Positions 2,383 to 56,253 of a stretch of 64,000 nucleotides of DNA are shown here, in pieces; the stretch's first letter is position 1, and each line of letters opens with the position of its first letter. Location: the IMG/VR virus record IMGVR_UViG_3300028840_002431, positions 124,001-188,000 of that record, one strand, 5' to 3'. A program made the position numbers and the translations under genes. The notes below the pieces were generated by a model. The model did not search any database. It saw nothing but the letters and a program-made list of their open reading frames with translations, and was not told the origin of the DNA.

Positions 2383-2619
2383 CTACTCCTCTTTCCGTAC
2401 GTGATCCCACAAGTTCTTATCAGGGCCTGGAGTCTTTTTACGCGACCGTTTCTCTCTTTTTGGGGCGGCCTCTAGGCTTTCGCACTCCCCGGCTGGCCTG
2501 ACGGTGCCGTAAGAGTCCTTGGCCATCAAAACGCCGTCCTCGTCAACGAAGATCACTATGTGCCCAACGTCGGGGGTGGTGACGGAAGCGGCAGACTGTT
2601 TTCGTAATTGTAACGGCAT
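2383..2619 (-). CDS. LWDH-tagged small protein
   Basis: Ends KNLWDHVRKEE. Confidence 0.7.
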   Translation of the reverse strand: MPLQLRKQSAASVTTPDVGHIVIFVDEDGVLMAKDSYGTVRPAGECESLEAAPKREKRSRKKTPGPDKNLWDHVRKEE

Positions 2620-2634
2620 CCGAACCTATTAAAA

Positions 2635-2817
2635 CCCTACACGCCATGTTGCCCCGTGGTCCTCCCAGCTACCAGAACTTAACGACTGGGTAGGGCGACG
2701 TGTAGGGGTGGCTTTCGCCTTGCATATAAGGACATCCGAGCAACGGTCCCACGTGAGCGTTCTTAGGTAGGAATGTTCAGCCTTACATTAGGGAGGAACC
2801 GTCGGAAGGAGCCTTAT
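2635..2817 (+). ncRNA. Candidate structured ncRNA (two nested-stem domains)
   Basis: Nested inverted repeats 2635-2707 and 2726-2817 with G-U pairs on the + strand; no ORF. Confidence 0.45.
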
Positions 2818-2962
2818 CTCCACACTACACCAAAAAAAATTAGAACCCCACGCCACCTAGGCTACCAAAGACAGGGGACGGCGTGGGGGACGAACGTTTG
2901 ACTCTCTGTCCGGGGGAGCCACGCGCTTGTCGTTAAACGCTACACCAAAAATGGAAAACCCG

Positions 2963-3337
2963 TTACCTCACGCTCTTGTTAGATTCCGTTATCGCCCTTG
3001 GCTTACCATCCAACTCTTCCACCTGCTCCGGTGTCCCCCATTCTTTCAGCAACGAATAGCACGAGAACCTAGGCCCGTACGCGCTGTTGATCATCCAATG
3101 AGCAAGTTGATAGTAAGGCACCTGGATATCAGCCGAACATATCTCGACGTGTTTTGGGTGGTGTTCTCGCATGTGGGTGTCCAGCCTGTTGGGGAACAAC
3201 CAATTGACCTCGCCCGAACACTGGTAAGAAGTTGCGTGGTTTTTGAGAAACCACTTGATGAACAATGTTGCGGCCAACCGTATATACCACGGGGCTTTGA
3301 TCCAATCATTGCCGTCGATAACAAGCTCTTGGGCCAT
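2963..3337 (-). CDS. Hypothetical protein
   Basis: ORF starting just downstream of the 3340-3795 stop. Confidence 0.5.
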   Translation of the reverse strand: MAQELVIDGNDWIKAPWYIRLAATLFIKWFLKNHATSYQCSGEVNWLFPNRLDTHMREHHPKHVEICSADIQVPYYQLAHWMINSAYGPRFSCYSLLKEWGTPEQVEELDGKPRAITESNKSVR

Positions 3338-3339
3338 GC

Positions 3340-6947: not shown

Positions 6948-7163
6948 ATGGTGTATTCCTACGACCGGCGCGTAGGCTTCTTCCCTCCCCCACGAGACGT
7001 ACGGGAGTGGTGGAGAAAACTCCCTCGACGCCTTCAAAGAACCGTGGTCCGGGAACTACGGCTTAGCTCCCACGACATGGATGACTGGGACGAGGTGGAC
7101 TGGGAGACCCTCACGGATTATTACACCCGCACGGAAGTAGGAACTCGCGGCCGACAACGCTAA
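6948..7163 (+). CDS. YSYD-leader protein
   Basis: Starts MVYSYDRR. Confidence 0.65.
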   Translation: MVYSYDRRVGFFPPPRDVREWWRKLPRRLQRTVVRELRLSSHDMDDWDEVDWETLTDYYTRTEVGTRGRQR

Positions 7164-7660
7164 CTGTCCTTGAGACAGTCGTACAGAGTTATCTGCACCG
7201 CTGGGACTTCAATCCCACGGATGAAATTCAGACAGTTGCCGAAGTTGTTAGCGTCGGTCGTATTTGTATAAGGGTAGTGGTTCTTAAACCACTCCCGCAC
7301 CATGCTATGGTCCACGATCAAACTCGTGGCTTCGAAAAAAGCAACGAGAAGCCCGTTGAGCCTCACGAACTCGAACTCGACCATAATGGCAGTCTTGGAC
7401 TTCCGAAGGCTTAGCTGCCCGACCTGGATGAAGAAACCAGGAAGTTTCGCCTCTTCCCACTCGACGTACCCCTGTCTCTTATTCTCTTGCCACAGAAGAT
7501 GCCGCTCGCACCTCGTGGCCTCCACGAAATAGACAACGTCGTCGAGCACAGAAGTGTCAACATCGACCAGCGATACTGTAACGTTGTCTACAGGCATTGA
7601 TTTACCGGTGTCCGCCAATTGCCCTGGCAGACCGGCGATCCAGGGTTGAGGTTTGTACAC
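7160..7660 (-). CDS. Hypothetical protein with variant tag (TLYDCL)
   Basis: Ends ITLYDCLKDS. Confidence 0.6.
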   Translation of the reverse strand: MYKPQPWIAGLPGQLADTGKSMPVDNVTVSLVDVDTSVLDDVVYFVEATRCERHLLWQENKRQGYVEWEEAKLPGFFIQVGQLSLRKSKTAIMVEFEFVRLNGLLVAFFEATSLIVDHSMVREWFKNHYPYTNTTDANNFGNCLNFIRGIEVPAVQITLYDCLKDS

Positions 7661-7812: not shown

Positions 7813-10285
7813 ATGCTAACAATCTCTGACGCTTTCAAAGCTGGACACATGCGGCTCCGCAGGGAACCCTGGAACCCCTTTGCCCATATCGAACTAATCC
7901 GTGCCGGGGACGGTCACGCCATTTGGGTCAAGCTCCACGATGTTACCCAGATGGTGGAAAGCACGGAACCCCAACAGGTGCCGCTCATGCCTCCCTACGA
8001 CGACGGGACCGCTGTCTGGGAGCCGTGGACGCCCACAGACGAGATCAAGAAACTCCAACCGGGCGTTGACTGGGCTTATTACGAAAAAGACATCTAACAT
8101 GACTCTCGACCACATACAGTCCGTAGCAGAGTATTACTGCACCTTGTTCCGCAAGAACAACATCAAGGCCGTCAACCGCAACGAAGAACTAGGCACATAC
8201 TTCGACGGTGATGTTAGATTCGACCCGGCTTTCGAGCACGCACACTGGATGTGCCAACAACTGTCCCGGATGACGGACTTCGAGAAAGCCAACCGCTGGC
8301 TAGGATTCGTCCAAGGTGTTCTGTGGACCGGCTCGTTCCGGTCCATAACACAAATGAGAGAGGACAACCGTACCGTATGACTCAAGACTTACAGCAACAA
8401 TTCAGCGAAGCGGCCATGGAGTTGAACCTTCAACTCGACAAGGCGTTCACCGTCATAAGAGAACACAAGCTGGGAGTACCGGCGCTGATCAACGCGGACG
8501 GTTATGAGGTCGGCCTCGATAAAGTCCGGGGCCAGTGGCAGTTCTACTACGCGGAAGATGGGATGAAAAAAGCCATGCACTCAGCCCCCATCCTGGCTCG
8601 AATTGCTCTCGCCAATAATCTAGAAGCACTGTGGGGGCAGATTTTACTCAACTACGGGGCAAAACGAGAGGCTATTATAGAGGCGGCCCGCAAAGCCGCA
8701 GATTTCTGCTCCGCCATGGAGGCACAAGATGACAGTGTATGAGTTAGAAAGGCATATGATCCCATGGGACGGGAACAACCCTCCTGAGGTCCCGCAGATT
8801 GTAATAGACGCTCTGGGAGAACCTTTAGAACAGGCCGTGAAGTCAGGCCCTATCGGTGTCGGACACACGGAAGAGACTGGTTGGTTTATCCTGATGTCTG
8901 GCCAAGGCCCCTTCATATTCTGGATGGAAAAAGAGGACGAAGGCCAGTACAGTCAGGCCAACGACGGCCGACGCGATGCCTGGGTTCGCGCACGCCCGTG
9001 AAGAAGAAGCAAACACTAGCTAAACTCCACAACGAGTTCGTGGTCCATGTGAACCGCGACCGTGGAATGAACACCATCTCAGTCCCGCTCTGCGGTCTAT
9101 GTGGTAACAACGGTATTATTAAGACCAAATGGCACCCACCGTGGACGGAGATGGAAACCGACTACGACTCTTACGAGTTAGAAGGCTACTGCATCTGTAA
9201 GAACGGTCGCGAGATGCGAAAAAAGGCGGTAGGGTCAAGATGGGGAGGCACCTCGATCACGAGAGTTCCTCTGGGGTGTAGCCCGCAAGAAGAAGTAGAA
9301 GAGCCAGAGAAAGAAGACGAAAACCCCAAAGATTTCTGGGACCACGTGAAGACGGAAGACTGATGGTAACAAAAGACCAATTGGAAGACTTGAAAAAGAA
9401 GCTCTCGAAGAAACTACCGTGGTGGCAGCCATTCGTGTCCCGCGAGAGGTTCGAGGCGACCCGACACATAGCCCGGCTTCTAGTCATGGAACTGGAAGAC
9501 GAGAGGAGCGGCGTCTGGAAGGACGTTGAGTAGTGCCGAAGGTGTGCAAACCTGACTGCCGGTTTCTATCACCAACGGAGGCAGAGCAAGAAATGATGAT
9601 AAAGCCGTGGCCGCCCCACATGTGCCGAAAATACAACCAACGGGTGCGGCACGTGGGGTACTTATACCCTGGAGAGGGAACCCATCCGGATTTGCTCGCT
9701 CTCCCTGAGTGCGACGGTATCGAGAACACGCTATGGGATCATCTGATGGAAAACTAAGGCTCTGGTGGTGCGGTTGGAACGTCCCCTTCAACATCCCACC
9801 TGAGGACATGCTCGAAGACTGGCCTTACGACATGCAAGGCTGGCACACGGGAGAAGGAAACGACTACTCGACATGGACCGGTGCCGTCTGGGCAGAAACC
9901 GACTCCGCAGCCACTGAGACCGTCTTGTCTTGTTATGGGGCGTCCAGTGATCAAATAACCTTACGCTGGCCACCCCGGCTCCAAGATGACGACTTCACAC
10001 CCGGCGACCGCTTCCCTGACTTCACCCTTAAGAAGCCCACTGGGCCGCCGCCTGAACCAATCAATCTATGGGACCACCTACAAAATGAGTGACAAACCAA
10101 AAGCTGGCCACATGACGCTGCCCAACCGGTTCGTCGGTCATTTGCTTCGAGATTTCGTGGACATCCGACGAGGCGTCGGCATGGACGACGCCGATATACA
10201 AGGGCAATTAGAGGCCCTGACCAACCACACGAAGGTGCCGACCACACTGTTACCCGCGATTCTCAAGATGGCGTTCAAAGAGTAA
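7813..10285 (+). other. Operon of about 9 small hypothetical ORFs (7813-8097, 8099-8380, 8377-8742, 8729-9001, 8998-9363, 9363-9533, 9533-9757, ~9709-10092, 10085-10285), three LWDH-tagged
   Basis: Stop/start overlaps; tags DFWDHV, TLWDHL, NLWDHL. Confidence 0.65.
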
Positions 10286-11757: not shown

Positions 11758-12012
11758 ATGGCGTCCAAACGCTATTCTAGGTGTACCCGGTGCGGCTCCA
11801 AATTTGATAGGTGGTTGGCGTGCTCCCATATCTACTGCCTCGACTGCCAACCACAGAATAGAAACAAGAACCTCTGGGACCACCTCAAAGACGACTGGCA
11901 GAATTACCTGACGTATACCGAAGAGGAACGAGCCAGAGATGTCCTACTAGATGAAGTCCCTACCCCGGACCTAGGTCCGGGGAGCCGTGTCCAGATTTCC
12001 GGTGTAATTTAG
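11758..12012 (+). CDS. Zn-finger protein with internal LWDHL tag
   Basis: Two CxxC pairs, then KNLWDHL. Confidence 0.6.
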   Translation: MASKRYSRCTRCGSKFDRWLACSHIYCLDCQPQNRNKNLWDHLKDDWQNYLTYTEEERARDVLLDEVPTPDLGPGSRVQISGVI

Positions 12013-12415: not shown

Positions 12416-12988
12416 GTGGTCAAAAAGAAGGACATACCGTTTTACCTAACATGCTTCATTGTCGGGGTTAGTGCCCCTCACACATTCAATTACGGTGTGG
12501 AGCACCCATGGAGAGCGATTCTCATCCTGTCCGGAGTCTTATTGATTTATGCCTTGATCGTCTACAGCCGGACGCTGTCAAAACAAGGGTTGGACGAAGA
12601 ACAAAAGTCGGAGGAGGAAACGGAGTCTGAAAACTATGCGACAGGGGAGGGAACCAGACGGGCAATCGATGAAGAATTTATGAGGGTTGCCGACAACACC
12701 TTGGGTCAACTCGCCGCCCTCGCGGAAGCCTCCGGGCGTTCAGAACCACACAGCGCCATCGGACCCACAGGGCCGGTAGGGCACCCAAACTACTCAGGTC
12801 TGGTGCCACTACAAGGTAGCGTTAGTGCCAGGGAATTGGGTTGCATCTGCCCGCACCCGAACGCCGCTGGTATCGGTCAAACCTTACCCAACCCTAGCTG
12901 CCCGATACACGGATCGAAAGAGCCGGAACCAAAACCAGAACCAGAGCCGGAACCAGAGAAAGATCTCTGGGACCATTTAAGAGGCTAA
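12416..12988 (+). CDS. Membrane protein with GCxCP...CPxHG domain and LWDHL tag
   Basis: Two hydrophobic segments; PE repeats; ends KDLWDHLRG. Confidence 0.65.
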   Translation: MVKKKDIPFYLTCFIVGVSAPHTFNYGVEHPWRAILILSGVLLIYALIVYSRTLSKQGLDEEQKSEEETESENYATGEGTRRAIDEEFMRVADNTLGQLAALAEASGRSEPHSAIGPTGPVGHPNYSGLVPLQGSVSARELGCICPHPNAAGIGQTLPNPSCPIHGSKEPEPKPEPEPEPEKDLWDHLRG

Positions 12989-13058
12989 GGCCGCCACCTT
13001 CCGGAGACGACCTCGTAACTCCTTCTACGCAGATGAGCTACCCAAGGATAACACAGAT

Positions 13059-14281: not shown

Positions 14282-14515
14282 GTGAGGGACCCGGCGATCG
14301 ACTGGACCAAGATCAAGGAACGACAGGACAATAGTCCTGAATGCCGCGACCACGAGGGCGTCTACCGACTGCTCAGCGGGCATCTGTATTACGACAGAGC
14401 GGGCAACCGGTCCCGTATCCTTAGCTTCTGTCTGGATGACCCGGAGCAAGGACCGGTTGTTATCGTGCCGATATTCCCGATCGGGGTAACGCTCTGGGAC
14501 TGTCTGACGACCTAA
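14282..14515 (+). CDS. Small protein with variant tag (TLWDCL)
   Basis: Ends VTLWDCLTT. Confidence 0.55.
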   Translation: MRDPAIDWTKIKERQDNSPECRDHEGVYRLLSGHLYYDRAGNRSRILSFCLDDPEQGPVVIVPIFPIGVTLWDCLTT

Positions 14516-39574: not shown

Positions 39575-39841
39575 ATGACCGGTATCGTTTGGCAAGACAT
39601 GGTAGTCGCGGGCGCTAACCTGCTATTCGCCTACTCCATTCTCACTCAAGTCGTCCATGGCTTCCGGGAGAAGAAGGGCTTCATCCTCCTACGTACCTCA
39701 GGGCCGACCACTCTGGGTTTGTACGCCATGGCTGTCGCTTTCTTCACCATCCCCCTCTTCTACTCCGCCTCAGTGGCCGCGTTCAATGCGACCCTCTGGC
39801 TTCTCCTCTTCATCCAACGGCTCATTTACGAGAAGGCGTAG
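39575..39841 (+). CDS. Three-TM membrane protein (PQ-loop/SemiSWEET-like)
   Basis: Three hydrophobic helices; 'SILTQV' at the PQ position. Confidence 0.5.
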   Translation: MTGIVWQDMVVAGANLLFAYSILTQVVHGFREKKGFILLRTSGPTTLGLYAMAVAFFTIPLFYSASVAAFNATLWLLLFIQRLIYEKA

Positions 39842-39849
39842 TTGATAAA

Positions 39850-40068
39850 ATGCCTCTGTGTTCTCGTTGCGAACGTATCTGGGTCCCCAAGAGGGCCGTG
39901 ACCGAACACGGCGATTACGTTTGCCTCCGTTGCAAGAGCGACCCCTGGTGTTGGGACTGCCCTGCCAAGTCGGTCCCGCCTTTCCAAACCGGGCACATCT
40001 GTAAGGACGGCTGTGTTCACCGCCGCCCGCCCCTGACCCTCTGGGCCGCCCTTTCGGGGGGCGACTGA
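39850..40068 (+). CDS. NPLCWxCP zinc-finger family
   Basis: CLRCKSDPWCWDCP; TLWAAL. Confidence 0.7.
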   Translation: MPLCSRCERIWVPKRAVTEHGDYVCLRCKSDPWCWDCPAKSVPPFQTGHICKDGCVHRRPPLTLWAALSGGD

Positions 40069-42875: not shown

Positions 42876-43721
42876 GTGACATTATCCGAGATTGTGCCTT
42901 TATACGAGACTCAGGAAGAGCGGACGCCGCCGCCTCCGTGGGACAACTGCGAGAGCGCCGTTATTCCCGATCTGGTTAACGTCTACTTCCCGACCGGCGA
43001 TGCTTTCCGTTGGTATGCCTTGGAGCGCGAGGGTGATGGACTCTGTATCGAAGAAGTCTACGTCGATGAAATAGGCACTGTGAGCCAGCGGCTAGGATAC
43101 GAGATTGAACAAGCCGACTGGACCGACATGATGGATCTTCCATGGACCACTGATGAGAAAATCCAATGGGCTGTGGAAGAGGGTATTGCTCCAGGGCAAC
43201 CCTTTCTGATTCGTTTCGGGGAGCCAGACCATTATCAGACCGGTGGTTGGGACGGCCCTGTTGAGTACGACGTTAACTACGACACTGAACTTGTCCGGGT
43301 CATCCCGTGGCCAGCCGAACGTGCCGCCTCTGTTTGGGAGGAATTTTTCGCCGCACGTAAACGGATGCTTGACTACAGGGCCGAGTGCCAAGCGCGTTTT
43401 GACGGGCAGATCGGGCACCATCCGGAGGTAATGAACCTTCGCAGAACCCGGTATTACGGCGCGAGTTGTTATGACGAGATGTGCCCACCTAACGGTGTTC
43501 GTTACACTCTGTACTCCGAGTATGAAATTGAGGCCACCCTCTTTGACCACCTCAGGGGCCTCGTTCCCTATTATATGAAGGGCAAGGCCATCTGTTCTGG
43601 CGAGAGCGACCAGGGGGACGAAAAGGCTGCCAAAGAAGCGCTCGTTAAAAAGGTCTTGGGGATGTATCCTCATATGACCAGGGAACAGGTTCTGGGTTTC
43701 CCGGTGAAGGATCATCTCTAA
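42876..43721 (+). CDS. Acidic hypothetical protein with internal TLFDHL
   Basis: 281-aa ORF; GTGA overlap. Confidence 0.7.
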   Translation: MTLSEIVPLYETQEERTPPPPWDNCESAVIPDLVNVYFPTGDAFRWYALEREGDGLCIEEVYVDEIGTVSQRLGYEIEQADWTDMMDLPWTTDEKIQWAVEEGIAPGQPFLIRFGEPDHYQTGGWDGPVEYDVNYDTELVRVIPWPAERAASVWEEFFAARKRMLDYRAECQARFDGQIGHHPEVMNLRRTRYYGASCYDEMCPPNGVRYTLYSEYEIEATLFDHLRGLVPYYMKGKAICSGESDQGDEKAAKEALVKKVLGMYPHMTREQVLGFPVKDHL

Positions 43722-44964
43722 TGAAGTGTAGGATTTGTTACACTCCTCTGAGAATGGGTATGGTCCCTGTCGAGGTAGGCCATGTCGCGATCCACGTATG
43801 CTCCGAGGGGTGCCTTGACGAAGCTCAGAAGCGGAAAGCCGCTTTGGGAGAACAATTCGAGGAACTTGTCCGAAACGCCAACTGCCTCTATTGCAAGACG
43901 CCCTTCGTTCCCTGGAAGCCGGAACAGATCTGGTGCTCCATGGTGTGTAAGGATCTTCTCCGGACGGAGGGCGTTCCCCGGTCTCTCTGGGACCACCTGA
44001 CGGCCGACTTCTGACACTTTTCTCGACTTTCGGCCCAACTACTATTGACAAAAATGCCTAAAAAGCGCACACGATCATAGGAGGCGGGGAACTCGCCTCC
44101 CAGATGTAAATGGAGGTGGGTATGAAATACAAGTTGTATTGGATCATGGCGTTGTTGGCCATGCAGGGCTGCCACATCTACAGTAACGGTCGGAAGGCCG
44201 ACGATGGGAAAGCCATTCTCTGTATGATTCTGGGCGCTCTCTGTCTGGCTGGCGCGGGCAACGAGCATATGGGTGGCGCTATCATCGTCATCTTCGGTTG
44301 CGCTCTCATCCTCTACGGGTGTCTGCCATGATCTTTGGAGATGACCCCAAGAGCAAGGCCGACTTCTTCGAGGCCAGTGAGGGTGAGGTAGACCGGCGCA
44401 AGCTGTATCTCTGGAAAGACGGTAAAGGGACCCACGCCTGTTTGGCGAATACCTTGAGCGAAGTGATAAAGAAGGCCAAGGCGATGGACCGCTCTTTCCC
44501 GATGTCAAACTACATGGTCGTCTCGCACGAGACGTTGTTGAAGATCTGCGGTTCCCTCAAACACCACATCGTGGCCATGGGCGAACACGACCTCTGGGAC
44601 CACCTGATGGAAGAGCAAACTTCGGAGAAGAGCATCAAGGATCAGATAACGGCCGCCTTTGTCGAATATAACGACTGCCGGTTCGACGGTTACGAGATCC
44701 GGCTAGGCGCTGATTATTACCGGGGTCAAACGGTGGGCCGTATCGGTTTGGTGGACTGTACAGCACCGAACGGTGCCAAGTGGTTCATCATAAGAACCGA
44801 CGACGGCCACATAAGATTCGAGCCGACCCTGGTTTGAAAAGGTCCCGACGCCCGCCCTCCGTACCGTCCAAAGCAGGAGGCTCCCACGGAGCGCCGGGAC
44901 CAACCGTATTATTACACCAAATTTCCTCTTCACACCAGAGCTTCTCCGGTGTAATATCTGACCC

Positions 44965-45114
44965 ATGGGCAATAAAGTAGAAGTTTACGACTTGGAGTGC
45001 GAGCTTGAGTACATGAAAGAGACCATGTACAAGGCGCTGGCACTGCCTCCCGAGATGCTCGAAGCCCCTCCTCCTAAAAACAAGACCCTCTGGGACCATC
45101 TCCGGGAGACCTAG
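44965..45114 (+). CDS. 49-aa LWDHL-tagged microprotein (not in ORF track)
   Basis: MGNKVEVY...KNKTLWDHLRET; CGGTGTAATAT upstream. Confidence 0.65.
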   Translation: MGNKVEVYDLECELEYMKETMYKALALPPEMLEAPPPKNKTLWDHLRET

Positions 45115-46568
45115 ATGGAATACTACTGGACAGCGGCGGCCGTCTTTATTGTCATGTTCTCATCGGCCTACGCGATCATCTCCAATATGGCCCGTGGCCA
45201 TAGGATGGAGATGGCTAAAAAAGAGGAGCGTTTGAGAGAACTCAACAGAGAGCTTCTCAAACAACAAGACGTTCTCTCGTCAGTCCGACACAAACTAGCG
45301 GCAACGGAACGAGACAACAAGTATTGGAGGTCGCGTTTCTTCGAGATCGTCAGACCGAACAACTCGAAAAAGGGCGACACGGAGCAACCTGAGGTGAGTC
45401 TCTGGGACCATCTAACGGGGTGAACATGGGCGATCTCAAAAAGGTGTTAGATTCGTGCCCGACCAACGTGGCGTTGGGTTACGCACGCTCACGGCCGAAC
45501 GAAACTGACGAACTCGCGCCGCCCGAAGAGGTGGTCGTCGTCCTAGCGTTCACGGAGAAGGGCTTTGGTTTCGGGGAGGTGTCTATCCACCAGACCCAAG
45601 AGGGCGTCTTTCTCGACACGGAGTGCATGTCCCTTGATCGGGTGAAGCGTTACTTCAACTCTCTCTTGGACAAAGCGATCCTGGACACCGACGAAGATCC
45701 TGAGCGCCACAAACTATACAATCGAGTAATGGGTCGTCATTGCGGCGACGGCTGCCCTGTATGTAACAATGGATAAGACTCAAACGGCACAGATAGACCT
45801 GGATTTCGAGAAAGCCGACGGGTGCTGCCGTTGCGGGCGTACACAGAACGATGACGATGGCTCTCAAGTCGAGTGGGAGTGTCAGATTTGCGATCGGCTC
45901 GTTTGCCGACATTGCACAATGACGATTCCCCACAGCGTTCCTAGGGAGTACTACGAGATGACCCTGTGCTCGCCTGAGTGTTGGGAGAAGGCCGGGCGTC
46001 CTGATGAGTGACGAGTTTTACTATTATTGTTGTGCCAGGGGGACCCGCTACCCCGGCACCAACGTTTACCACGCCCTGAACGAAGCCGGGGATGGTCCTG
46101 TTTGCGGTACCCCTATCGAGGAGTCCAACTTCGCCATAATGGATTTACCTCCCAAATATGGCCGGAAGTGCAAACGCTGTTTCAGAGACCTATGGGAGCA
46201 TTTGAAGTAACCATGGCATTCTGTACCAACTGCGGCGCACCATTCGGCTCCGACAACCAGCGGCTCGAAGACGGCTGTCGTAAGTGTTCCTGTATGCATT
46301 CCCATGTCGCCAAGTGGTTGGACCGATACAAACACGAGATGATCAACCCCTACAAGGCCGGGTTGTCAGCCGCCCCACTGTTGAGGCAGCTACGCTCCGA
46401 GGGTCAAGTCATCTACTGCCCTCGTTGCGCCAAGGAGATTGATACGATAGACCCCTTGGCCCAACCGACAACCGACAACGAGGGGCGGCGTCCTTACGCT
46501 GTCTACTGCGACTGTGGCTCACCTGTGATCGCCACCAAACCTCAAACCCTCTGGGACCATCTTAACGA

Positions 46569-46853
46569 ATGACCGACCCGAGAATACTATCCCCCGAGAC
46601 AATCGAGGCCGGTCGTATGTTAATGCTGCGCGGCAGCCGAAAGGCTTTCCTTTACTGGGCCGCACAGAACTTGCGGCATATAAGCTACAAAGACATCCGC
46701 CGTATACTCGATCGGGACCCCATTTGGGAAAAGGCAGCACTAGCGTCAGAGCGCGATGTAATCTTCACTACCCTGATCGACCACTACCACAAACTACTGA
46801 CCGAGAACCCGGTAGGCAAAAACAGAAACCTCTGGGACCACCTGAAAGACTGA
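46569..46853 (+). CDS. 'GR..F..W' helical family protein, LWDHL-tagged
   Basis: Similar to 51771-52058, 54109-54780 and 55673-55933. Confidence 0.65.
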   Translation: MTDPRILSPETIEAGRMLMLRGSRKAFLYWAAQNLRHISYKDIRRILDRDPIWEKAALASERDVIFTTLIDHYHKLLTENPVGKNRNLWDHLKD

Positions 46854-49800
46854 TATGCCCCGGTGTATCGCATGTGAAAAGGATTTCGAGAGCGACACCC
46901 GTGACGGGTGGGCATGGTGTTATGATTGTCTCCCCGAGAGCGCCATGACTGAACAGGAATGCTCGTGGCCACAGCCAGATCGACTTCATCGGGTTCGTTC
47001 GCTGCTTTCACGATAACGAGGTCGGAGAAACCATGATCGTTGTCCTCAAGGTAGCCACTGCCCTGTTGGCCCTGTTCGGCCTGATATGCCTGTTGGACGC
47101 TGCCCGTATAATCGTCCGACACTTTTGGAGACGGATGCGTAATGGCTGAGTTACATTCACACCTGGACCTGGAGTACCACGAGGAGCGGCTGAACCTCGA
47201 CAAAGAATACACCAAGGCACGTCACTGGAAAGAAGAGTACATCACGAAGTTAGAGAAGGAGCCTCTCCACGTTGACTTGGCCCGTCGTGTTAAAAAGAAG
47301 ATGGCCGAGATAAGGCGGCCACTGACCCTCTGGGATCATCTGAAAGATGAGTCCTTTCTGGCGGTGTAATATATCTGAAAGGCAAATCATGGCGAAGAAA
47401 GACGAGAATTCACGAGAGTTAAAACCGGGCGAGATCGACGAAGCGCTCAACTTTGTCCAGGGCTTGTTACAAGGCGGCTCCCCCGATGCGAATATGGACA
47501 ACCCCATGGTTGCCGGTGTTGTCCGCACAATCGCCCCCAAGCCCAACCCCGGCTTCACAAAAGGTGAGCCGATGAACCGAGCCGAGTTCCGGAGCCTCAA
47601 GCCGGGCGACTGGTTCTGGGTCTACTGGGCCAAGGACGATAACCCGGAAGATGTTCGGTTTAATAACCCGGAACAAGTCCTGGAGTTCGTGCCGGGTGTT
47701 GGTAGAAAAAAGGGCTACGTCCGTACAGAGGACGCCGACTGGGAAGAACCAATCGACGAAACCGGCAACGACGCCGACACGAGCCGGGGTTACGCCTACT
47801 ATTACCACGTGGAGAAATAGGAGTTAGAAATGGTCTACTACTTTCTGAGTGTGCTGGAGAGCCTAGACTCAGCCTTGGACATCGTGGTCGGTGTCGGCTT
47901 TCTGGGTATTATTGCCTACGTCGTCGGGGGTGTCATCAAAGCCAGCGAGGAGAGCGCTTTCCTCCAACGTATCGGCCGGATCGCCGCCATAACCGGGATG
48001 GTTGCTCTTGGGGTTGACGCCTTGGTCCCCACCCAGGAACGGCTTCTCCGAGCCTATCTCATGGTCCATGGGGCAGAAGCGCTCGAATCCAACAACTCGA
48101 AACGGGCTGTCGAAGACTTCACCGAACGGGTGGATGCGATCGTTACCGCCGTGCAAGCGTCCAACCGGGCACTCGAAGGAAAGACATACTGATGGCTCTG
48201 AAGGATGAGTACTACAACTTCGTCCTGGACGAAGAGCCTCCGGACCCACCCGTCGAGAAGCGGATTCTCTTTGCCATTGTTCAAGACTTCACTGACCGTC
48301 GGGGTCTCCGTCAGGAGTGGGAGCAAACCGACGAAGATATCCAAGACGAGATGTTGGAGACGTGGCTTCAACTCATAAAAGATAACCTGGGGAGTTAGAA
48401 TTATGCTTCCCTGTGACCACGGCCGGTGTGAGGTATGCGAGAAGGTCTACTGGATTCCAGCCGGGGTCGGGCCAAGGTTTTGCTCCTCTGGGTGTTGGGA
48501 GTACATGGCCATGGAGTCGTTCCTTAAGGAGTTCCACTACCTCTCGAACATGAAACTATCTCTCTGGGACCACCTCAGGATAAGTTAGAATGATCAACTT
48601 TCTCTGTAAGCTGGGTTTGCACCGATGGGTTCCGAGCACCTACCACGACTGGTGTTTTTTTGGGATCAATATCACTTGCGCCCGCTGCCACGAACCACAC
48701 CCGGCTTATATCACCAGACCTGAGGACGAATGCTCCGAGTAAATAAAATACTCAAAGACGCCATAGCGGCCGACACAGATAGTCTTAAAAAGGTTATCCG
48801 CGACTACAAGGATCAAGACGATCTTGACGACACAGAGATTGACATCCTTGTCCTCGTTTGCGCTCTGCACCAAGCCAGAGTTGATATGTTCAAGGCTCTG
48901 GATGGAAAATTTGCTCTCCACAAGCGGTTAGCCAAGATCGATGTTTCACGTGAAACGCCGGACGGGGCCGCTATCGAGACCGTGTACCTCCCGGCCAATT
49001 GTGCCCACATGCGGACAGACGGTGCTCACAGTTATTGCGGTATCCAGAAGGGTGAGCACTTCTGGCCCTCCGAGAAACCACACGATCGCCAGTGGTGCCC
49101 CTTCTGTGTGGAAGTGGCCGAGCACCGTGTGCCGCCCCAATTTCTCCGAGAGACTAAGATTGTTTGGGGCATTTAACTAACTTGAGGCAGACATGTCAGG
49201 GAACAAGAAAGACCACGTTGAATTTAACTACTACCCAAAAGACGCCAGCCCTGGTGACGGGACTTTGCGCCGTACTGTGCTCTTAAAAGATATCGCATCC
49301 GTTGACGAAAGAGACAAAAGGACGTGCGTCGTTACCATTGGGCGCAGAGACAGTACTAATATTTTGGTCAACGAGCCGTACGACTTTGTTATTAAAAGAC
49401 TTGGTTGGACCAAAAGGATACGGCGTAAGAGGGAGAAGAAGGGGAAGGAGAACGGGAACCAATGATTTATGTCGCTTTCATGGGATTGGCTGTCATTGCT
49501 ATTTTAACAACTGTGGCGGCCCACTACTACTCCAAGGCTTCCAAGTCCGAGGCCGCGCTGAGTGGTATCAAGGCTCAACTAGAACAGGCCGAGAACCAAA
49601 GAAAGATCTTCGCGGAGTCCAACCGCCGGATCATCGAACAACTCGAAAAGGTCCGTAACATGCTCAAGGAGGGTAAGACCATGAGCACCATCGAATCCGA
49701 GTTGGAGCGTATGGAGGAACCGGAAAAGACTCTGTACGATCATCTACAAGAGGAACGCCCTCAAGAGGAGCCTTCTTAGTTTTATCAACTATGCCTCTCA

Positions 49801-51226
49801 ACGTCTCTAATATAGAAGCTCAATGGGAAGAGATAAGCGCCAAGATAAAAAAGCTAGAGGAGACGCACGGGCAGATCAAAATAAACCATGAACGCATCAC
49901 TGCCCTAGTTGAAAAAATGGCTGCCGAAGAGGCGGCCAAGCCTAAAAAGACCCTTTGGGACCACCTGAGAGGCAGTTAGTTTTAATGGAGTTCCGGGCTA
50001 AAAAATCAACTGCTAAACCTGTCGTTCATATGGCGGGGCCGGTTCGTGAGACAGAGGGTAAGAGAGTCCAATTATGCCGGTGGTGTTATAAAGTGCTCGC
50101 TACCGAACATCGAGACCGATGGGGGCAGATAGTCAGCGTGGTGGGTGTATTTCAAGAAGGCGCTTTGATCCGTGAGCGCTCCGTAGCATCTTTCAAACTA
50201 AAGAATCCAAACGGCCCCCCAGACCCTTTCTGCTACCAGGACCCAGCGACAGATAGAAACCTCTGGGGACACCTGATGGAGTGACGGCCGTTTTATCTTG
50301 AGCGTCGGTGTAATACTTGATAAATTGACAAACGATGGTGAGCGTAGGTGACATAATTACACGTGGGGTTGAGCGCTTCGCGGTCATGGATGTCCGCCGC
50401 TCGCCACACCACATCCCTCCCGAGACTACCCACGCCACGATGTACGCGATGGGACAGGATATTGTGATCAACTGGACGGCCGCCAAAGGGATATTTAGCG
50501 CCGGGGACCGAGAGGCTAATCTTCTAGACATCGACGGAACTGTTGTCACCGTGTCCTTGAAGCCCATACCCAAGTTTCGCCTTCCGGGCAGCCAAGAAGC
50601 CAAGCTTGAGGGGTGCAACTGCCCTGTCGCGGACAATGCGTTTGAAGCACCAACGTCTGAAGCCCCGGCCTCCATATCCAGTTTCCGGTTCGTGTTCCGA
50701 AACGATTGCCCGGTGCATGGGACGGACCTCACCCCCGACGAACCCTTCTCCCTACGAACCCTCTGGGATCACGTAAAGGAAACATGACCAACGCTGAAAA
50801 GAAACTGACAAGCGCCCTACTCCGACTCGCCTCCGAATCTTACTCCAACCACGGGTGTAATGATTTCAACGTCTGTGAGGAGGCTGGACTCACCCCTGAG
50901 GAGGCCGACGATCTCTGGCATCAGCTAGGCGCGTGGGACGATCCGGAGCTTGGCAACAGGTCAGGCCCCATTCACACGGATTGGCTTCTCATGCGGTATC
51001 TGGCCGACTCTCTGGATATGGAAACAGCACCTTGACCACCTACCCTCACAAGTGTGCCATGTGTCAGGAACCGTTCTGGCACAAACCTATCAAGCGTGAG
51101 GGTAAGAAGCTCTGGTGTTCCTGGGATTGCTGGGACTGGGACACGAACGAGTGTGCCCCGACCATGGACCTCTGGCACTTCGTAATGGAAGGGGAGTAAT
51201 GTTGCCGCCCCGGTGTAATATATGGT

Positions 51227-51499
51227 ATGAAGTGGTTCTACAAAAACGTGCCGTATTTTGGCATCGTGGCTCTCAGCCAACAGGCCCAGCGTCAGGCCCG
51301 AAAACGTAGTATCAGCGACAAGGAGATTGCCGACGCTCTATATTTCGGCAAGCAACGGCGTATCGACTACGGTAGAGCCGTCGAGTTCGACGGCGTCCAA
51401 CTTAAGATCATCAGACCCAAGGGGAAAGCTATCGACCTCGTCTCTAACGTAAAGCGTGTCAATTTCTACTCCCTTTGGCACGCCGTGATGGAAGCATGA
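51227..51499 (+). CDS. DUF4258-like (RNase toxin fold) protein with variant tag
   Basis: LSQQAQRQARKRSISDKEIADALYFG; ends SLWHAV. Confidence 0.5.
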   Translation: MKWFYKNVPYFGIVALSQQAQRQARKRSISDKEIADALYFGKQRRIDYGRAVEFDGVQLKIIRPKGKAIDLVSNVKRVNFYSLWHAVMEA

Positions 51500-53681
51500 A
51501 GGAGTGTAAGGGGGTTATGATGCGCAAGTTGGAGCCGAAACACATCATTTTCCTAGCCGCCATTGCGGCTATCGTGCTCATAAACGCTATCAACGCTATA
51601 ACTAAGAAGCCCCGAGAGTCCGCCTGTGCTGTTTGCGTGAGAAACAACGCGCCTGTGGAGTGTGAAAAGATCTGTGCCATCGAGAACTCTGTTTCCGAGG
51701 GAGCGAGACTCAGGCTTCTAAGAGAACCCAAAAACCCAAAAGCTAAGTCCGACGGCTGGTTGGGGGAGTAGTGGCAAAGCTAAGCCCCAAAACCATCCAG
51801 GATGGCCGAGACCGTCTAGCCGCGTATGGGCCGACTGACCTCTTCTTCCGCTGGATGAAGGAGAACTTTCCAAAGCTCAACCACCGGGCCTTACGAACAA
51901 CGTTTGAAAAGATCCCACCTAACGACACCGAACGCCTCTTTACCCTTTACGACATGATAGCCCAACACTACGATACCAAGGGTCGGGCCAAGGCGTGGGC
52001 CACACTTATTGTTGCTATCCTCTGGGGGATCGCCAGCCTCTGGGTTCTAATGAAATGACCATCTCGTTTCCCGCCAAAGCAGACCGCCTGTGTAAGATAT
52101 GCGGTGGCCAATGGCACTCCAAGCGTTCGAAGGAGTGCCCGGCGTGCGTTACCGACTGCCCTACGTGTGGGAAACGCTACAGCCTACGCTACAAGAGGTG
52201 CCCCAAGTGTAACCGCAAAGAGAACCGCAAACACCCGTTCCTACGAGGGGTCAAAGACCTTTGGGACCACCTGAGGATCACCTGATGTCCGACACCGACG
52301 ACGAAAGAGCCATGAACTGGTTGAGGGCACACCATCCCGACGCCCTGGAAGTGGAGCACCGGCCCTTCTATCTTTCCCGGCTCGTCCCTTGCACCATCCG
52401 GTGTTGGCGCGTCGGCGGCCCAGTTACTCTCTCGAATGACGGCGTCTGCCCGGAGTGCGGAGCCACGTGGCACACGACGCTCTGGGAGCACCTGGAAGTG
52501 GAGCCTTGATATGCCCAACCTGAAGACAAAGATGCCTCTTTTTTATGAACTCCCGAAGGAGGCTACCGTCGAAATTGTCTCCACGACGGGGAGCATACCG
52601 CTCACACAAAAGTTCGCGTACCATTACGCCCGAAGTTCCCGCAACTTTGTGCCTGTCGTCAGCGCAAAACCCTCCAACAAGAACCTCTGGGACCACCTCC
52701 AAGAAACATGACACCCCAACAGAAACTCCAGTGTTGTATGTGTGACGAGGATCTGAGCGGACGTTTTAAAGTCCAGGACCGGGGCTACTACTTCTGTGCA
52801 ACATGTTACGACGCTCTCCCTCTCTGCAAGACTTGTAAGCGTGTGATTTTACCCGGAGAAGATGCTCTGGAAGGACTTTGCGACGAGTGTTATGTGACCA
52901 TCTTGCACAACGGCAAGGAGCCGCGTCCGAATCGTCCACGCCCCAACCGAGATCTGTGGGACCATTTGACGGAGGAGTCTTGATATGCCCCTGAACCTCT
53001 ATGACTGCGTCTCTGACGAAGCTAACGTGTCCGTGTGTAAGAAGTGTAAGAAAGCTCCGGAGATACTGATCCCATGGCGTACAAGCCCAAGGGAAAAGAA
53101 CCCGCTCATCTGCGTTAAATGCCTCGAAAAAGAGTTCGGGAGACTCCAGAAGATCGTCAAAGCTGTGGCGTCGATGCTCGACCTGCCGAAGACCGCCAAG
53201 CTGAGCGACTTTACGGACCACCTGTCCAGGTTGAAGAACGAGCGTGACGAGTACCGACGGTGGCACGACGAGTTAGCGAGTCAATTTGAAGAGGCTATCC
53301 AGACGTTACGTGAAGCCATGGTCCAAGCGCCCTCTAGGTTCATAGGCACGATGGTTGTAGCGGCGGAGAAGGCCGAACCCAAAAATAAACGGCGAAAGAA
53401 GAAAGCGAAACCAAAACAGGACATGAAAGTATATACCGCCGTGAAGGACGACGTGGACATTGCCCTTGGCATTTTCGATGACATATAACAAACAAGGGTA
53501 CCCCCTGTGCGACGCAGGGCACCAGAGAAAGGAAAAGAAGACGTTTCTGGCCATGGACCCCGGCGTGGGTTCTGACAGTACGGCCATTTGCTTCTTTACA
53601 CTCGATACCGAAAAGCCTATATTGAGGTTTACCCTTAGAACGGCCCGCAAAACCCTCTGGGATCACATAAGGGAGAGTTAG

Positions 53682-53858
53682 ATGCCCAAAAACAAAGACC
53701 TAAAAGACCTCTGGGACCACCTCTCTGAACCCAAACCTGACATGACCTCCTGTCTCCTTTGCCTCCAAGGGGACAAGCCTTATTGTGACCCGTGTCCCAT
53801 GAAACACACCGAAAAACAGCAACTCTGGGACCACCTAAGGGGCGATTTAGGTGTATAG
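53682..53858 (+). CDS. 58-aa microprotein with two LWDHL tags (not in ORF track)
   Basis: MPKNKDLKDLWDHL...CLLC...CDPC...QQLWDHLRGDLGV. Confidence 0.65.
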   Translation: MPKNKDLKDLWDHLSEPKPDMTSCLLCLQGDKPYCDPCPMKHTEKQQLWDHLRGDLGV

Positions 53859-54812
53859 ATACTAAGGAGTTAGAATGGAAACCCTGACAAGATACTTTGT
53901 CGGCCTGAGCATCTTTCTCGCGGTGGGTATCACCGTGTTCGCTTTTGCGCCGGAAGAAGACTCCAGCCACTATGTCGGCTTCGGTTGTGCCCTCGTGGGT
54001 GTGATAATAGTTACCACGGCCTTCTTTGAATTCTACGTCAGAGAGATGAAGACTAAAGAAAAAGAGAAGGAGGCAAGGCGACGTTGATGCCTGTCTGTTT
54101 GGTGTTAGATGCCAACTTGCCAACAGTGTGCCGGGTGGTTCCCCGTCCAGAATAGATCCTTTGAGCAGTTCTTGTGCCCCGCGTGTTACCAGGATGTGTT
54201 GCGTCATCTGGCGGAACGCGCCCGGCAGATCATGGACGTAAGGCATTGTAGGGTTTGCGGGCGCACTTTGACGGAGTCGTCTCATGTGTGCTCCGCCGAC
54301 TGTGCTCTAACACTACGCAGAATTATTGCTGACGGTCGTCAGTTGGTTCAGTACGGCACGCGCACGGACTTTCTTCTCTGGGCCAGAGAACAGGGTGGAT
54401 GGAGTGAGGACGAAATTACACCTTTCGATCACCCGAGGGTTTGGGAACAAGACAGAACTGAGGCTCACCGCCTCTTCGATGACTGGGCCGGACGCACCGA
54501 AACGAACCCGATCACTCCGGATGTGCGCGTAGAAGAATGGCCTAACGTCAACATCTGCCACATCTGCCCGGCCCAGAACACGGACATGTGCTCTGCCGAG
54601 TGTGAGCACCGGAATCAGATCTTCCAACGTGTAGGCCCTGTGCCCCCGTCAGGGCCGACCTATCCAGGGGGCCGACCCGACGACAGTCGGCCAACAGACG
54701 AACAGGCCGAACTTCTCAAGGCTTTTGAGGATTTGGACAAACCCGACAAAGACCTCTGGGACCACCTCAAGAAGGAGTGACCCAGCGGTGTAGTATCTGG
54801 TAGGGTGTTAGG

Positions 54813-55070
54813 ATGCAGCACCGTTATGATGACGTTCCCGGCCACGGTAGAGTAGTCTTGAGCCACCACGCTCAGGATCGAGCCGAAGAACAACAGATCA
54901 CTGACCGTCAAATCGAGGACGTTCTGTTCGAGGGACACGACATCCCGGACGGCGACTCTACCTTGAGAGAGTTCAAGGGAATCAGGGTCGTGATCATCAC
55001 ACCGTCCCCATGGAAAGGGGCTAAACTGGTCAAAACCATATACAAGGTCTTGCCAGCGAGGATTCATTGA
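54813..55070 (+). CDS. DUF4258-like (RelE/BrnT-type fold) protein
   Basis: LSHHAQDRAEEQQITDRQIEDVLFEG...IRVVI...LVKTIY. Confidence 0.65.
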   Translation: MQHRYDDVPGHGRVVLSHHAQDRAEEQQITDRQIEDVLFEGHDIPDGDSTLREFKGIRVVIITPSPWKGAKLVKTIYKVLPARIH

Positions 55071-56253
55071 GTAAATTAGGCCCAACAGATAAACACCCCA
55101 ACGGCAAGCTCAACAAGGACGACGAAGGAGAGATTCGTTTCGCCGTTGGTTCTCACGATGGTAATGTCATCCTGGACTTCGGTTCACCGGTCGCGTGGGT
55201 GGGGATGCCGCCACCGTTGGCCCGCCAACTGGCCGCGATGTTGATTCGACACGCCAATGCTATTGAAGGACATTGATGCCAGACAAGCCGCTTTTGAGTA
55301 GGAGGGACGCTTACAGAATCCTTGGGTTCGACGAAAACGAGCGTTTCCGTAACTACGAGCTTGAGCACGAGCTTGAGAGTCAATGCGATCTGGAAGAAGG
55401 CGAGATTATTATAGGCGAATGGTGCCCGTTCAACGGTATATACTGCAAGTTCTTCGACGTAGCTCCGATCAAGGCCCTGGAAGAAGCGAAAAGAAACAGA
55501 GAGGGCCGACCCCAAGGAAATTAACATCCCCGCCATGGTCAAGAAGATCGACAAAGAGATCGACAGACGAAAGCCTCTGGACCTTTGGGATCATCTACGA
55601 GAAAGCCCCGATGAAGGTAAGATCTTCACATCACGTCAAATCCGGATGGCCAAGGGGGTACCACAATAAAACATGTTCTCCGATGCCGTTGTAAAAGAGG
55701 GCCGTCTACTTTTAGAGGCTAAGAACCTCCCTGGTTTTTACTCGTGGTGCAAGGCGCATCTCCCACGTTTGAATCAGGCCAAGATCCGGGAGATATTCGA
55801 CGACCCTCGATTGTGGGAGAAGCAGACAGGGAGTATAGATAACCGTCCTCTCAGGTACTACTACGACCTCCTACGCCGGTACAAACGGCTCGTGGAAGCA
55901 AAGAACCTCTGGGACCACCTGAGAGGGAACTGATGCCCTTCTGCTACGAGTGTGGGAGAGAATTCGCGGACGGCGGGGGTGTCGTGGTCAACGCGCTCCC
56001 CGGAGTCGTTTTTTGCTCAGCTACCTGTGTGGCTGAAAACACCCGACCATGGCCCAAATGCGAGGTGTGTGAACAACGGTTTCCCCCAACCACAGGTGTG
56101 GGTGGCGACATATGCGACCGATGCTACTCCCGAATTAATGTGAGAATAAAGCCCAAGGGCGCTAAGAAGCGCAAAGTGGACAAAAACCTCTGGGACCACC
56201 TGAAAGACTCTTAGGTTTCTCGAAGCTGGTTCGTACACCTAACGGAGAAGACG

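What the first reader, a model, noticed from the sequence alone, without database searches (positions are those of the whole stretch)
2383..56214. About 58 unrelated small proteins share one short peptide tag, [TNDS]-L-W-D-H-L: a candidate protein-addressing or docking system
Seen: by manual count about 58 ORFs carry the motif or a close variant, about 50 of them within the last ~15 residues. Examples end at 9757, 10092, 12988, 20967, 21828 and 24708, and about 44 lie in 37063-56214. It is in frame in every case noticed, including on minus-strand genes (2383-2619, 7160-7660). Codons vary synonymously (CTC/CTA/TTG/CTT-TGG-GAC/GAT-CAC/CAT) and substitutions are conservative (W>F/Y, D>E, L>V/I), so selection appears to act on the peptide. 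It often follows a Pro/Lys/Glu-rich linker. The cargoes are heterogeneous: Zn fingers, TM proteins, coiled coils and nuclease-like folds. Inference: a short linear motif that docks a large, exchangeable effector library onto one hub. Candidate hubs are a phage sliding clamp (cf. T4 gp45-binding SLDFLF and PIP boxes), a compartment/nucleus shell or import factor, a capsid-loading scaffold, or a protease adaptor. I know of no described phage motif used at this scale.
Basis: partly seen in the sequence, partly recalled or inferred. Interest (0 to 1): 0.92.

Follow-up and report, generated by a model that had tools for sequence, protein, structure and literature searches.

The report
One peptide tag, fifty phage proteins
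In this stretch of a 416-kb uncultured phage, about a third of the genes encode small, mostly unrelated proteins that end in the same six-residue peptide (T/N/D-L-W-D-H-L), which is most likely an address label that plugs them all into one common partner that has not been identified.

Summary
55 of about 172 genes in the window carry [TNDS]-L-W-D-H-[LVI] or a close variant. 51 of them have it 1-10 residues from the C-terminus. 42 lie in 37063-56214, where 65% of genes are tagged. Chance predicts about 0.3 peptide hits and 0.7 DNA hits.

Selection acts on the peptide, not the DNA. Every real DNA match is in the coding frame, and synonymous codons follow genome usage. A related 398-kb phage with different GC content carries the same peptide on at least 43 other, mostly non-orthologous proteins, using its own codons.

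The tag is an appended module. One cargo domain has 67 homologue clusters, and only the copies from the two tag-bearing phages have the Pro/Lys-rich linker plus tag. AlphaFold models a confident body and an unstructured tail.

A distant 485-kb relative has no tags. No paper in the searched library mentions the motif.

My best reading is a portable short linear docking or addressing motif read by one conserved receptor. I could not identify that receptor. Prohead loading (T4 CTS logic), a clamp-like platform and a protease tether all remain open.

DNA/RNA element, translational coupling peptide and paralogue-remnant readings were tested and are disfavoured.

The parts
37063..42879 (+). First block of the dense island: 16 tagged genes. 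Their stops are at 37287, 38259, 38516, 39108, 39578, 40068, 40292, 40588, 40885, 41154, 41396, 41638, 41975, 42160, 42688 and 42879. Many are Cys-rich zinc-ribbon-like proteins. This block includes the PLTLW-x-x-[LI] variant family.
43721..47369 (+). Second block: 7 genes tagged at the C-terminus, with stops at 44014, 45114, 45423, 46210, 46572, 46853 and 47369. 45115-45423 has an N-terminal membrane helix, then a coiled coil, then the tag.
48403..51499 (+). Third block: 7 tagged genes, with stops at 48588, 49779, 49979, 50284, 50787, 51199 and 51499. 49462-49779 is membrane-anchored with TLYDHL. The last two carry the weakest variants, LWHFV and LWHAV.
52055..56214 (+). Fourth block: 10 tagged genes, with stops at 52285, 52509, 52711, 52983, 53681, 53858, 54780, 55669, 55933 and 56214.
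53682..53858 (+). 58-aa protein with two tags: DLWDHL at residue 10 and QLWDHL six residues before the stop.
55535..55669 (+). 44-aa protein with the tag near its N-terminus (residue 17).
44328..44837 (+). 169-aa protein with DLWDHL in the middle, 76 residues before the stop. It may be a tagged gene fused to its downstream neighbour.
   Evidence: the fusion is my inference
42876..43721 (+). 281-aa protein with internal TLFDHL, 55 residues before the stop. It is uncertain whether this is a functional tag.
2383..2619 (-). Tagged minus-strand gene (NLWDHV). Its orthologue in the 398-kb phage ends in TLWEHI.
7160..7597 (-). Minus-strand gene with the variant TLYDCL three residues before the stop.
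8998..9363 (+). 121-aa protein: a conserved zinc-binding body, an acidic/Pro linker and DFWDHV. This is the test case showing the tag is an appended module.
9533..10092 (+). Two overlapping tagged genes: 9533-9757 (TLWDHL) and 9733-10092 (NLWDHL).
11815..12012 (+). 65-aa ORF with NLWDHL at residue 20, 41 residues before the stop.
12416..12988 (+). 190-aa protein with two predicted membrane helices, a long (EP)n/(KP)n linker and DLWDHL. The charge distribution places the tail in the cytoplasm.
   Evidence: topology inferred from the positive-inside rule
14282..14515 (+). Variant TLWDCL, with His replaced by Cys.
20662..21828 (+). Three tagged genes: 20662-20967 (TLWDHL), 21150-21386 (NLWDYL) and 21397-21828 (DLWDHL).
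24454..24708 (+). Tagged gene (NLWDHL), a paralogue of 21150-21386.
56640..56876 (+). Weakest candidate (GLFQCV). Membership is doubtful.

Best explanation
The hexapeptide is a portable short linear docking or addressing motif. It sits at the end of a disordered Pro/Lys-rich spacer, almost always 1-6 residues from the C-terminus. It is recognised as a peptide by one conserved receptor, so that a large and fast-changing set of small accessory proteins is brought to the same place or the same fate. These proteins include many zinc-ribbon-like ones and a few membrane-anchored ones with cytoplasmic tails.

Shown here:
- selection acts on the peptide;
- the position is terminal;
- the tail is predicted to be disordered;
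- the tag has been appended to an otherwise untagged domain family;
- the tag is kept across two diverged phages while the cargo turns over.

Inferred:
- The tag binds a receptor. L, W and the last L would be hydrophobic contacts. T/S/D/N followed by D three residues later fits a helix N-cap and capping box. His is replaced mainly by Cys, which hints at a metal or hydrogen-bond contact.
- There is a single receptor.

What the receptor is remains open. My ranking within this explanation is:
- about 0.3: loading into the prohead or virion for co-injection, following the logic of the T4 capsid targeting sequence and encapsulin cargo-loading peptides;
- about 0.25: a cytoplasmic platform on DNA or RNA polymerase, of sliding-clamp type;
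- about 0.15: a tether or degron for a protease;
- the remainder: another phage or host scaffold or compartment.
For: Frame and chance. There are 45 peptide hits against 0.3 expected. 37 of 38 near-exact DNA matches are in the coding frame, although neither of the other two frames of the 15-mer contains a stop.

Codon usage. Codons for D, H, the last L and the preceding T/N/D/K match genome usage (p>0.1). In the 398-kb phage (48.6% GC) the same peptide is written in that genome's codons, with GAC:GAT at 15:13 and CAC:CAT at 14:17.

Position and context. In the combined set of 94 tags the mode is 3 residues before the stop, and there is never zero. Pro and Lys are enriched about twofold in the linker.

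Module behaviour. The body of 8998-9363 has 67 homologue clusters, and only the clusters from the tag-bearing phages have linker plus tag. AlphaFold gives the body pLDDT 86-97 and the tail 48-70 with no secondary structure. The orthologues differ in linker length but keep the tag.

Cargo diversity and turnover. Only 13 of 55 bodies fall into paralogue families. Only 5 orthologous pairs between the two phages are tagged, all 5 are tagged in both, and no well-covered pair is tagged in only one phage.

Lineage restriction. There are no tags in the 485-kb relative LR745208.1. A third related fragment carries a tag.
Against: - No receptor was found, and no binding was modelled or measured.
- All five core residues are conserved. 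That is more than a one-face amphipathic helix needs, so the bound conformation is unknown.
- The tags are confined to one part of the genome. Only the canonical DNA form was searched across the whole 416-kb contig, which would also fit a purely local evolutionary origin.
- Three membrane-anchored carriers fit poorly with capsid loading.
- No cleavage site that would release cargo is conserved before the tag.
- The tag does not match any known docking consensus.
Confidence: 0.6

Rival explanations
1. The conserved unit is a DNA or RNA element at gene ends, such as a promoter, a processing or translational-operator site, a mimic of the 16S rRNA 3' end that masks the next Shine-Dalgarno, or a recombination junction. 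On this reading the peptide is only a by-product.
For: - The motif lies 10-30 nt upstream of the next start codon, and the residues after it often encode purine-rich, SD-like codons.
- 13 sites share an identical 14-mer.
- The first Leu is biased to CTC, at 31 of 43 against 29% expected. In the relative it is biased to CTY.
Against: - The motif is always in one frame, although all three frames of the 15-mer are open.
- All other synonymous sites follow genome usage.
- Two-nucleotide changes preserve the chemistry of the residue: TGG to TTC, TTT or TAC, and CTG to ATT or GTA.
- The related phage writes the same peptide with different codons.
- Copies also occur near the N-terminus or inside proteins.
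- The Leu bias is partly a general preference before TGG: 14 of 30 Leu-Trp pairs outside tags use CTC. It would also avoid creating an out-of-frame ATG or GTG next to the following start codon; that point is my inference.
Confidence: 0.03
2. The peptide acts in cis on the ribosome as a nascent-chain signal at termination, promoting re-initiation or coupling in long arrays of tiny genes.
For: - The tag is always close to the stop, most often 3 residues away.
- 69% of tagged genes overlap or abut the next start codon.
Against: - Untagged genes in the same island are coupled just as tightly: 71% against 65%, Mann-Whitney p=0.48.
- The distance to the stop varies from 1 to 12 residues, whereas known arrest peptides need fixed spacing (general knowledge).
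- Tags occur on isolated minus-strand genes, at N-termini, and before 40-nt gaps.
Confidence: 0.05
3. All carriers descend from one ancestral small gene. On this reading the tail is just the slowest-evolving remnant, with no common partner.
For: - Several small paralogue families exist among the carriers.
- The genes are clustered in tandem in one orientation.
Against: - The bodies include zinc ribbons, Cys-free helical proteins and membrane proteins.
- MAFFT aligns nothing but the tag.
- One body belongs to a wide family whose other members lack the tail, so the tag was added rather than inherited with the domain.
- Near-invariance over 94 copies, with randomised synonymous sites, still requires strong selection on the peptide.
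Confidence: 0.07
4. The tag is a degradation signal, or a tether to a AAA+ protease. It either times the removal of early proteins or makes each carrier an adaptor that delivers its bound target for destruction.
For: - The architecture of a folded body, a long flexible linker and a short terminal peptide is that of adaptor tethers such as the SspB tail (general knowledge).
- It works for soluble proteins and for membrane proteins with cytoplasmic tails.
- A papain-like peptidase conserved at 68% identity lies about 7 kb beyond the window in both phages.
Against: - No AAA+ protease or adaptor was seen in the roughly 110 kb examined.
- The variable residues after the tag argue against recognition of the free C-terminus.
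- The tag does not resemble known degrons.
Confidence: 0.12

Closest known systems
T4 capsid targeting sequence (CTS) of the internal proteins
   Same: [quoted passage not shown] The genes sit in variable loci, and the tag is portable to foreign proteins.
   Different: The CTS is N-terminal, is removed by the prohead protease, and serves a handful of proteins. Here the tag is C-terminal, has no evident cleavage site, sits on about 55 proteins in this window and at least 43 in the relative, and three carriers are membrane proteins. Virion content is untested.
Encapsulin cargo-loading peptides and microcompartment encapsulation peptides
   Same: A short terminal peptide is sufficient for loading into a shell with an HK97-type fold, and it can sit at either end of the cargo (PMC7355545). 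Here the tag is mostly C-terminal, occasionally N-terminal, and follows a flexible spacer.
   Different: The sequence is different. No shell gene lies next to the cargo genes in the regions seen. The number and diversity of cargos here are far larger.
Sliding-clamp interaction motifs: bacterial QL[SD]LF type, PIP box, and the C-terminal tails of T4 gp43, gp33 and gp55
   Same: A five- to six-residue hydrophobic motif at a flexible terminus is used by many unrelated clients of one ring-shaped hub, and small transcription factors are among the clients in T4. This is from my own knowledge and is a lead only.
   Different: There is no Gln anchor, and the order of hydrophobic residues differs. His and Asp are invariant here. 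No clamp gene was found in the accessible DNA. Membrane-anchored and zinc-ribbon clients at this scale are unknown for phage clamps.
Adaptor tethers and degrons of AAA+ proteases: the SspB C-terminal ClpX-binding peptide and the ssrA tag
   Same: The architecture is the same: a folded domain, a long disordered linker and a short C-terminal peptide (my own knowledge).
   Different: There is no sequence resemblance. No protease partner was identified. Known systems tag one or a few proteins per genome by genetic encoding.
Protein import into the phage nucleus (Chimalliviridae, PicA pathway)
   Same: A phage-built compartment must select many proteins.
   Different: [quoted passage not shown] No chimallin or other marker of that family was seen here.

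Membership tests
T4-type capsid targeting sequence | N-terminal leader of about 10 residues | tested here: not met
   51 of 55 tags are within 10 residues of the C-terminus.
T4-type capsid targeting sequence | Removal by the prohead protease at a conserved site between tag and cargo | tested here: not met
   No conserved residue other than Pro and Lys precedes the tag. L-x-E occurs only after it, where cleavage would remove 1-4 residues.
T4-type capsid targeting sequence | Carriers are present inside virions | not testable with these tools
   The phage is uncultured and no proteome is available.
Bacterial beta-clamp binding motif / PIP box | Consensus QL[SD]LF or Qxx[LIM]xx[FY][FY] | tested here: not met
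   The logo of 94 tags is [TNDS]-L-W-D-H-[LVI], with no Gln and no terminal aromatic pair. The consensus patterns are quoted from my own knowledge.
Bacterial beta-clamp binding motif / PIP box | A clamp encoded by the phage or host that binds the peptide | not testable with these tools
   About 110 kb of the 416-kb phage was inspected and showed no clamp family.
Encapsulin cargo-loading peptide | Terminal peptide on cargo encoded next to a shell gene | tested here: not met
   The terminal peptide is present, but no HK97-fold shell or encapsulin family was found among the neighbours with Pfam hits.
Repeated DNA/RNA regulatory element | Conservation independent of reading frame and of codon position | tested here: not met
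   The frame is fixed, and third codon positions follow genome usage in two phages.
Paralogous multigene family | Detectable similarity outside the shared tail | tested here: not met
   42 of 55 bodies have no BLAST relative in the window. The multiple alignment aligns only the tag.
Short linear docking motif (general class) | Short, in a disordered region, conserved while the flanks and cargo vary, and portable between unrelated proteins | tested here: met
Short linear docking motif (general class) | Demonstrated binding to a defined partner domain | not testable with these tools

The most novel reading that the evidence does not exclude
A clade of roughly 400-kb phages uses one genetically encoded C-terminal 'zip code' to route an interchangeable arsenal of at least 40-55 small proteins per genome to a single machine. 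The machine could be the prohead, giving a large library of pre-made proteins injected with the DNA. It could also be a protease or other hub, which would make each carrier a plug-in adaptor that brings a different host target to it. Either case would be protein addressing on a scale not described for any phage, and it would give a simple handle (the tag) for finding and sorting host-directed phage proteins in uncultured viruses.
Probability: 0.3. Interest if true: 0.9.

Novelty: new variant of a known kind. Interest (0 to 1): 0.85.

Why it matters
Huge phages are full of small genes with no recognisable function. Here one hexapeptide groups about a third of the genes in a 64-kb region, and at least 43 more in a relative, into a single functional class by sequence alone. 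It also predicts the existence of one receptor that all of them use.

Finding that receptor would assign a destination or fate to about a hundred orphan proteins at once. It would also show whether terminal addressing peptides, known from T4 internal proteins and encapsulins, have been scaled up in giant phages. And it would provide a portable tag for delivering proteins to that destination.

The tag is also a practical search key for this phage lineage in metagenomes. It picked out a fragment binned with a Pirellulales genome, which gives a first, weak host hint.

Tried and rejected
1. DNA-level element. Rejected on frame, codon usage and the cross-phage comparison.
2. Link to translational coupling. 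Stop-to-start distances are the same for tagged and untagged genes.
3. Sigma-70 promoters or intrinsic terminators in the island. Counts are within shuffle expectation.
4. Census of tagged proteins with a profile of 25 tails against 5.8 billion proteins. Only 159 candidates shared words with the query. Only the window's own proteins passed, because a 6-9-residue match cannot reach significance at that database size.
5. Word-indexed search with 8998-9363. It found only itself.
6. DNA 14-mer scan of viral contigs. The 17-mer scan was clean.
7. LR745208.1 as a comparator for phylogenetic profiling. It shares only 5 of 172 proteins, so it is too distant to be useful.
8. Hub candidates by context or conservation:
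   - The protein with two sigma-70 region 4 domains (15841-16356) also occurs in the tag-free LR745208.1.
   - The most conserved neighbour (82% identity) is a SpoU/TrmL-type RNA methyltransferase.
   - The 438-, 495-, 715-, 405- and 241-aa conserved proteins give no informative PDB match; the 495-aa protein's only hit is a marginal one to the MutL N-terminal region, E = 0.0099.
   - The N-domain of the 28255 family models as one long helix plus a three-stranded sheet, with no significant fold match.
9. Fold search with the body of 8998-9363. No match.
10. P0008, a homologue ending in DLYQEI, as a possible sign of a variant tag system. Its 7.5-kb contig has no other such tails.
11. Bacterial and archaeal genome scan for host proteins carrying the tag. 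16 hits, near the roughly 9 expected by chance on my own rough estimate (not tool-computed), and only the phage fragment L177 is convincing.
Full report
Where the window comes from. The 405-aa protein at 16516-17733 is found at 100% identity on IMG/VR contig IMGVR_UViG_3300028840_002431, which is 416,539 bp. From the coordinates, the window is about 124,001-188,000 of that contig. The same phage was assembled from several related samples. The window has 55% GC, no tRNA genes and no near match in GenBank phages. The only GenBank relative is LR745208.1, an unannotated 485-kb uncultured phage at 29% protein identity. My simple codon-model gene caller gives 172 genes covering 88% of the window, nearly all under 300 aa. 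Public gene calls for the same DNA agree closely. Recognisable functions are few:
- an amidase endolysin (4406-5236);
- DUF7227;
- a protein with two sigma-70 region 4 domains (15841-16356);
- an AAA_33 kinase (60148-60675);
- an HD domain (60846-61343);
- a receiver-like protein (56254-56577).

L[WFY][DE]H[LVIM] occurs 45 times in the six-frame translation, against a mean of 0.3 and a maximum of 2 in 100 Markov simulations. 42 called genes have the strict motif and 13 more carry close variants, giving 55. 51 of the 55 have it 1-10 residues before the stop. 42 lie between 37063 and 56214, where 65% of genes are tagged. The two minus-strand cases are real. The 10 kb to the left of the window has no tag, and the 25 kb to the right has one variant. 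A whole-collection scan for the canonical DNA 17-mer hit the 416-kb contig only inside the window. That scan covers the canonical codon form only.

Peptide or nucleotide? The DNA 14-mer with up to 2 mismatches has 38 matches against 0.68 expected, all on the coding strand. 37 are in the LWDHL frame, although the other two frames of the motif contain no stop. Codon choice for Asp, His, the last Leu and the preceding Thr/Asn/Asp/Lys is indistinguishable from genome usage (all p>0.1). The exception is the first Leu, which is CTC in 31 of 43 tags against 29% expected. Part of that is a general preference before Trp, since 14 of 30 Leu-Trp pairs outside tags use CTC. The related phage prefers CTT/CTC at the same position. 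A pyrimidine there avoids creating ATG or GTG with the following TGG just upstream of the next start codon; that explanation is my inference. Substitutions keep the chemistry at the cost of two nucleotide changes (W to F/Y, L to I/V). I conclude that selection acts on the translated peptide.

A second phage gives the decisive comparison. Contig IMGVR_UViG_3300017991_000048 (398,071 bp, 48.6% GC) shares orthologues with the window at about 35-82% protein identity. In the roughly 74 kb of it that I could fetch, at least 43 ORFs end in the same peptide, on both strands and on proteins of 55-240 aa. Their Asp and His codons follow that genome's near-even usage. Only five orthologous pairs are tagged. 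All five are tagged in both phages, and no well-covered pair is tagged in only one. So the cargo set turns over while the tag is kept. The combined logo of 94 tags is P-P-K-[T/N/D/S]-L-W-D-H-[L/V/I]-[R/K/T]-[E/D/G], followed by a few more residues and never by zero. His is replaced mainly by Cys (5), Ala (4) or Tyr (3). LR745208.1, read in full in 50-kb pieces, has no strict tag and no enriched C-terminal word. A 7.7-kb contig binned with an uncultured Pirellulales genome is a fragment of another relative and carries one tagged ORF.

The tag is an appended module. With the tails removed, only 13 of 55 carriers have a BLAST relative in the window. MAFFT of 25 tails aligns nothing except the motif. 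Carriers are richer in Cys than non-carriers (4.3% against 1.9%, p=4e-6), and 28 have at least one CxxC. Three have N-terminal membrane helices whose charge distribution puts the tail in the cytoplasm (inference). The 18 residues before the tag have about twice the usual Pro and Lys and are depleted in Ala, Leu, Ile, Phe and Trp.

The body of 8998-9363 belongs to a widespread family of small zinc proteins, with 67 representative clusters at E<0.001. All the others end just after the domain. Only the representative from the tag-bearing phages has linker plus tag, and one further homologue ends in a loosely similar DLYQEI. AlphaFold with 41 homologues models the body at pLDDT 86-97 and residues 95-121 at 48-70 with no secondary structure. 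The two orthologues differ in linker length but keep the tag.

What it most likely does. These properties are those of a short linear motif that folds on a partner: short, terminal, in a disordered tail, portable, and conserved far beyond its surroundings. The simplest model is one conserved receptor that reads the tag. I could not identify that receptor. The neighbourhood holds accessory enzymes and DNA-binding proteins rather than clamps, proteases of the AAA+ type, shells or capsid proteins. The candidates I looked at led nowhere; they are listed under Tried and rejected.

The logic closest to a known phage system is the T4 capsid targeting sequence, where diverse internal proteins share only the tag (PMC3012670). 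Heads of giant phages can hold about 50 different proteins (abstract of PMC7411985, listed). However, the position, the lack of a cleavage site and the membrane-anchored carriers differ from T4. A clamp-type platform or a protease tether fits the architecture equally well. Known phage-nucleus import uses no linear signal (PMC11087766).

Rivals. A nucleic-acid element and a paralogue remnant are disfavoured by the tests above. A nascent-peptide role in coupling is not supported: tagged and untagged island genes abut their neighbours equally often (71% against 65%, p=0.48), and the spacing to the stop is variable.

Novelty. No paper in the searched library contains the motif in a relevant context, and targeted searches found no description of such a tag in phages. 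I rate it as a new variant of a known kind, namely terminal addressing or docking peptides. It is remarkable for its scale and for the clean evidence of peptide-level selection. The receptor and the biological outcome remain unknown.

Noticed in passing
window 48,502-48,561 and 62,524-62,695: Two independent assemblies (ENA ERZ27256783, 416 kb, and JGI Ga0180437_10000411, 84 kb) carry about 14 kb (48.56-62.5 kb) inverted relative to the flanks. In the assembly whose junctions I examined (L139) they are mosaics of flipped 28-64-nt pieces. A 173-kb contig from the same sample ends at the left breakpoint. There is no long inverted repeat at the ends. This may be a real invertible segment or an assembly artefact.
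   Followed up: partly
window 28255-29022; L135 13695-14561; L177 6126-6929: This protein family is conserved in three tag-bearing phages and absent from GenBank phages. It has a 75-aa N-domain (one long helix plus a small sheet), a KKKKK patch and a long Pro/Glu-rich disordered region. It also has its own conserved C-terminal motif, D-P-[LV]-x-x-A-L-x-E-[IL]-E, so it is a second terminal motif system.
   Followed up: partly
window 15841-16356; L135 11918-13108: This protein is built of two sigma-70 region 4 domains. The 398-kb phage has a 396-aa version with the unit duplicated again. A homologue exists in LR745208.1.
   Followed up: partly
L177 (CAZTKW010000138.1, 7,688 bp): This contig is binned as an uncultured Pirellulales bacterium, but it encodes homologues of three window proteins and a tagged ORF. 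It is probably a phage fragment, which gives a weak hint that the hosts are Planctomycetota.
   Followed up: partly
L156 about 12480-13125 and about 16850-17345: Two ORFs in the 398-kb phage that end in the tag lie where the public gene calls place genes on the opposite strand. The tag may help correct gene calls in these genomes.
   Followed up: no
L159 10001-10765 and 17203-17760 (about 7 and 14 kb right of the window): Three enzymes lie here: a papain-like cysteine peptidase (68% identical between the two phages), a SpoU/TrmL-type RNA 2'-O-methyltransferase (82% identical, the most conserved protein seen) and a sulfotransferase. In the 398-kb phage the methyltransferase sits directly beside tagged genes.
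   Followed up: partly
first Leu codon of the tags, e.g. window 42662, 43985, 46830: The first Leu is CTC or CTT in 84% of tags here and 71% in the relative. Purine-ending Leu codons, which would create ATG or GTG with the following TGG, are avoided.
   Followed up: partly
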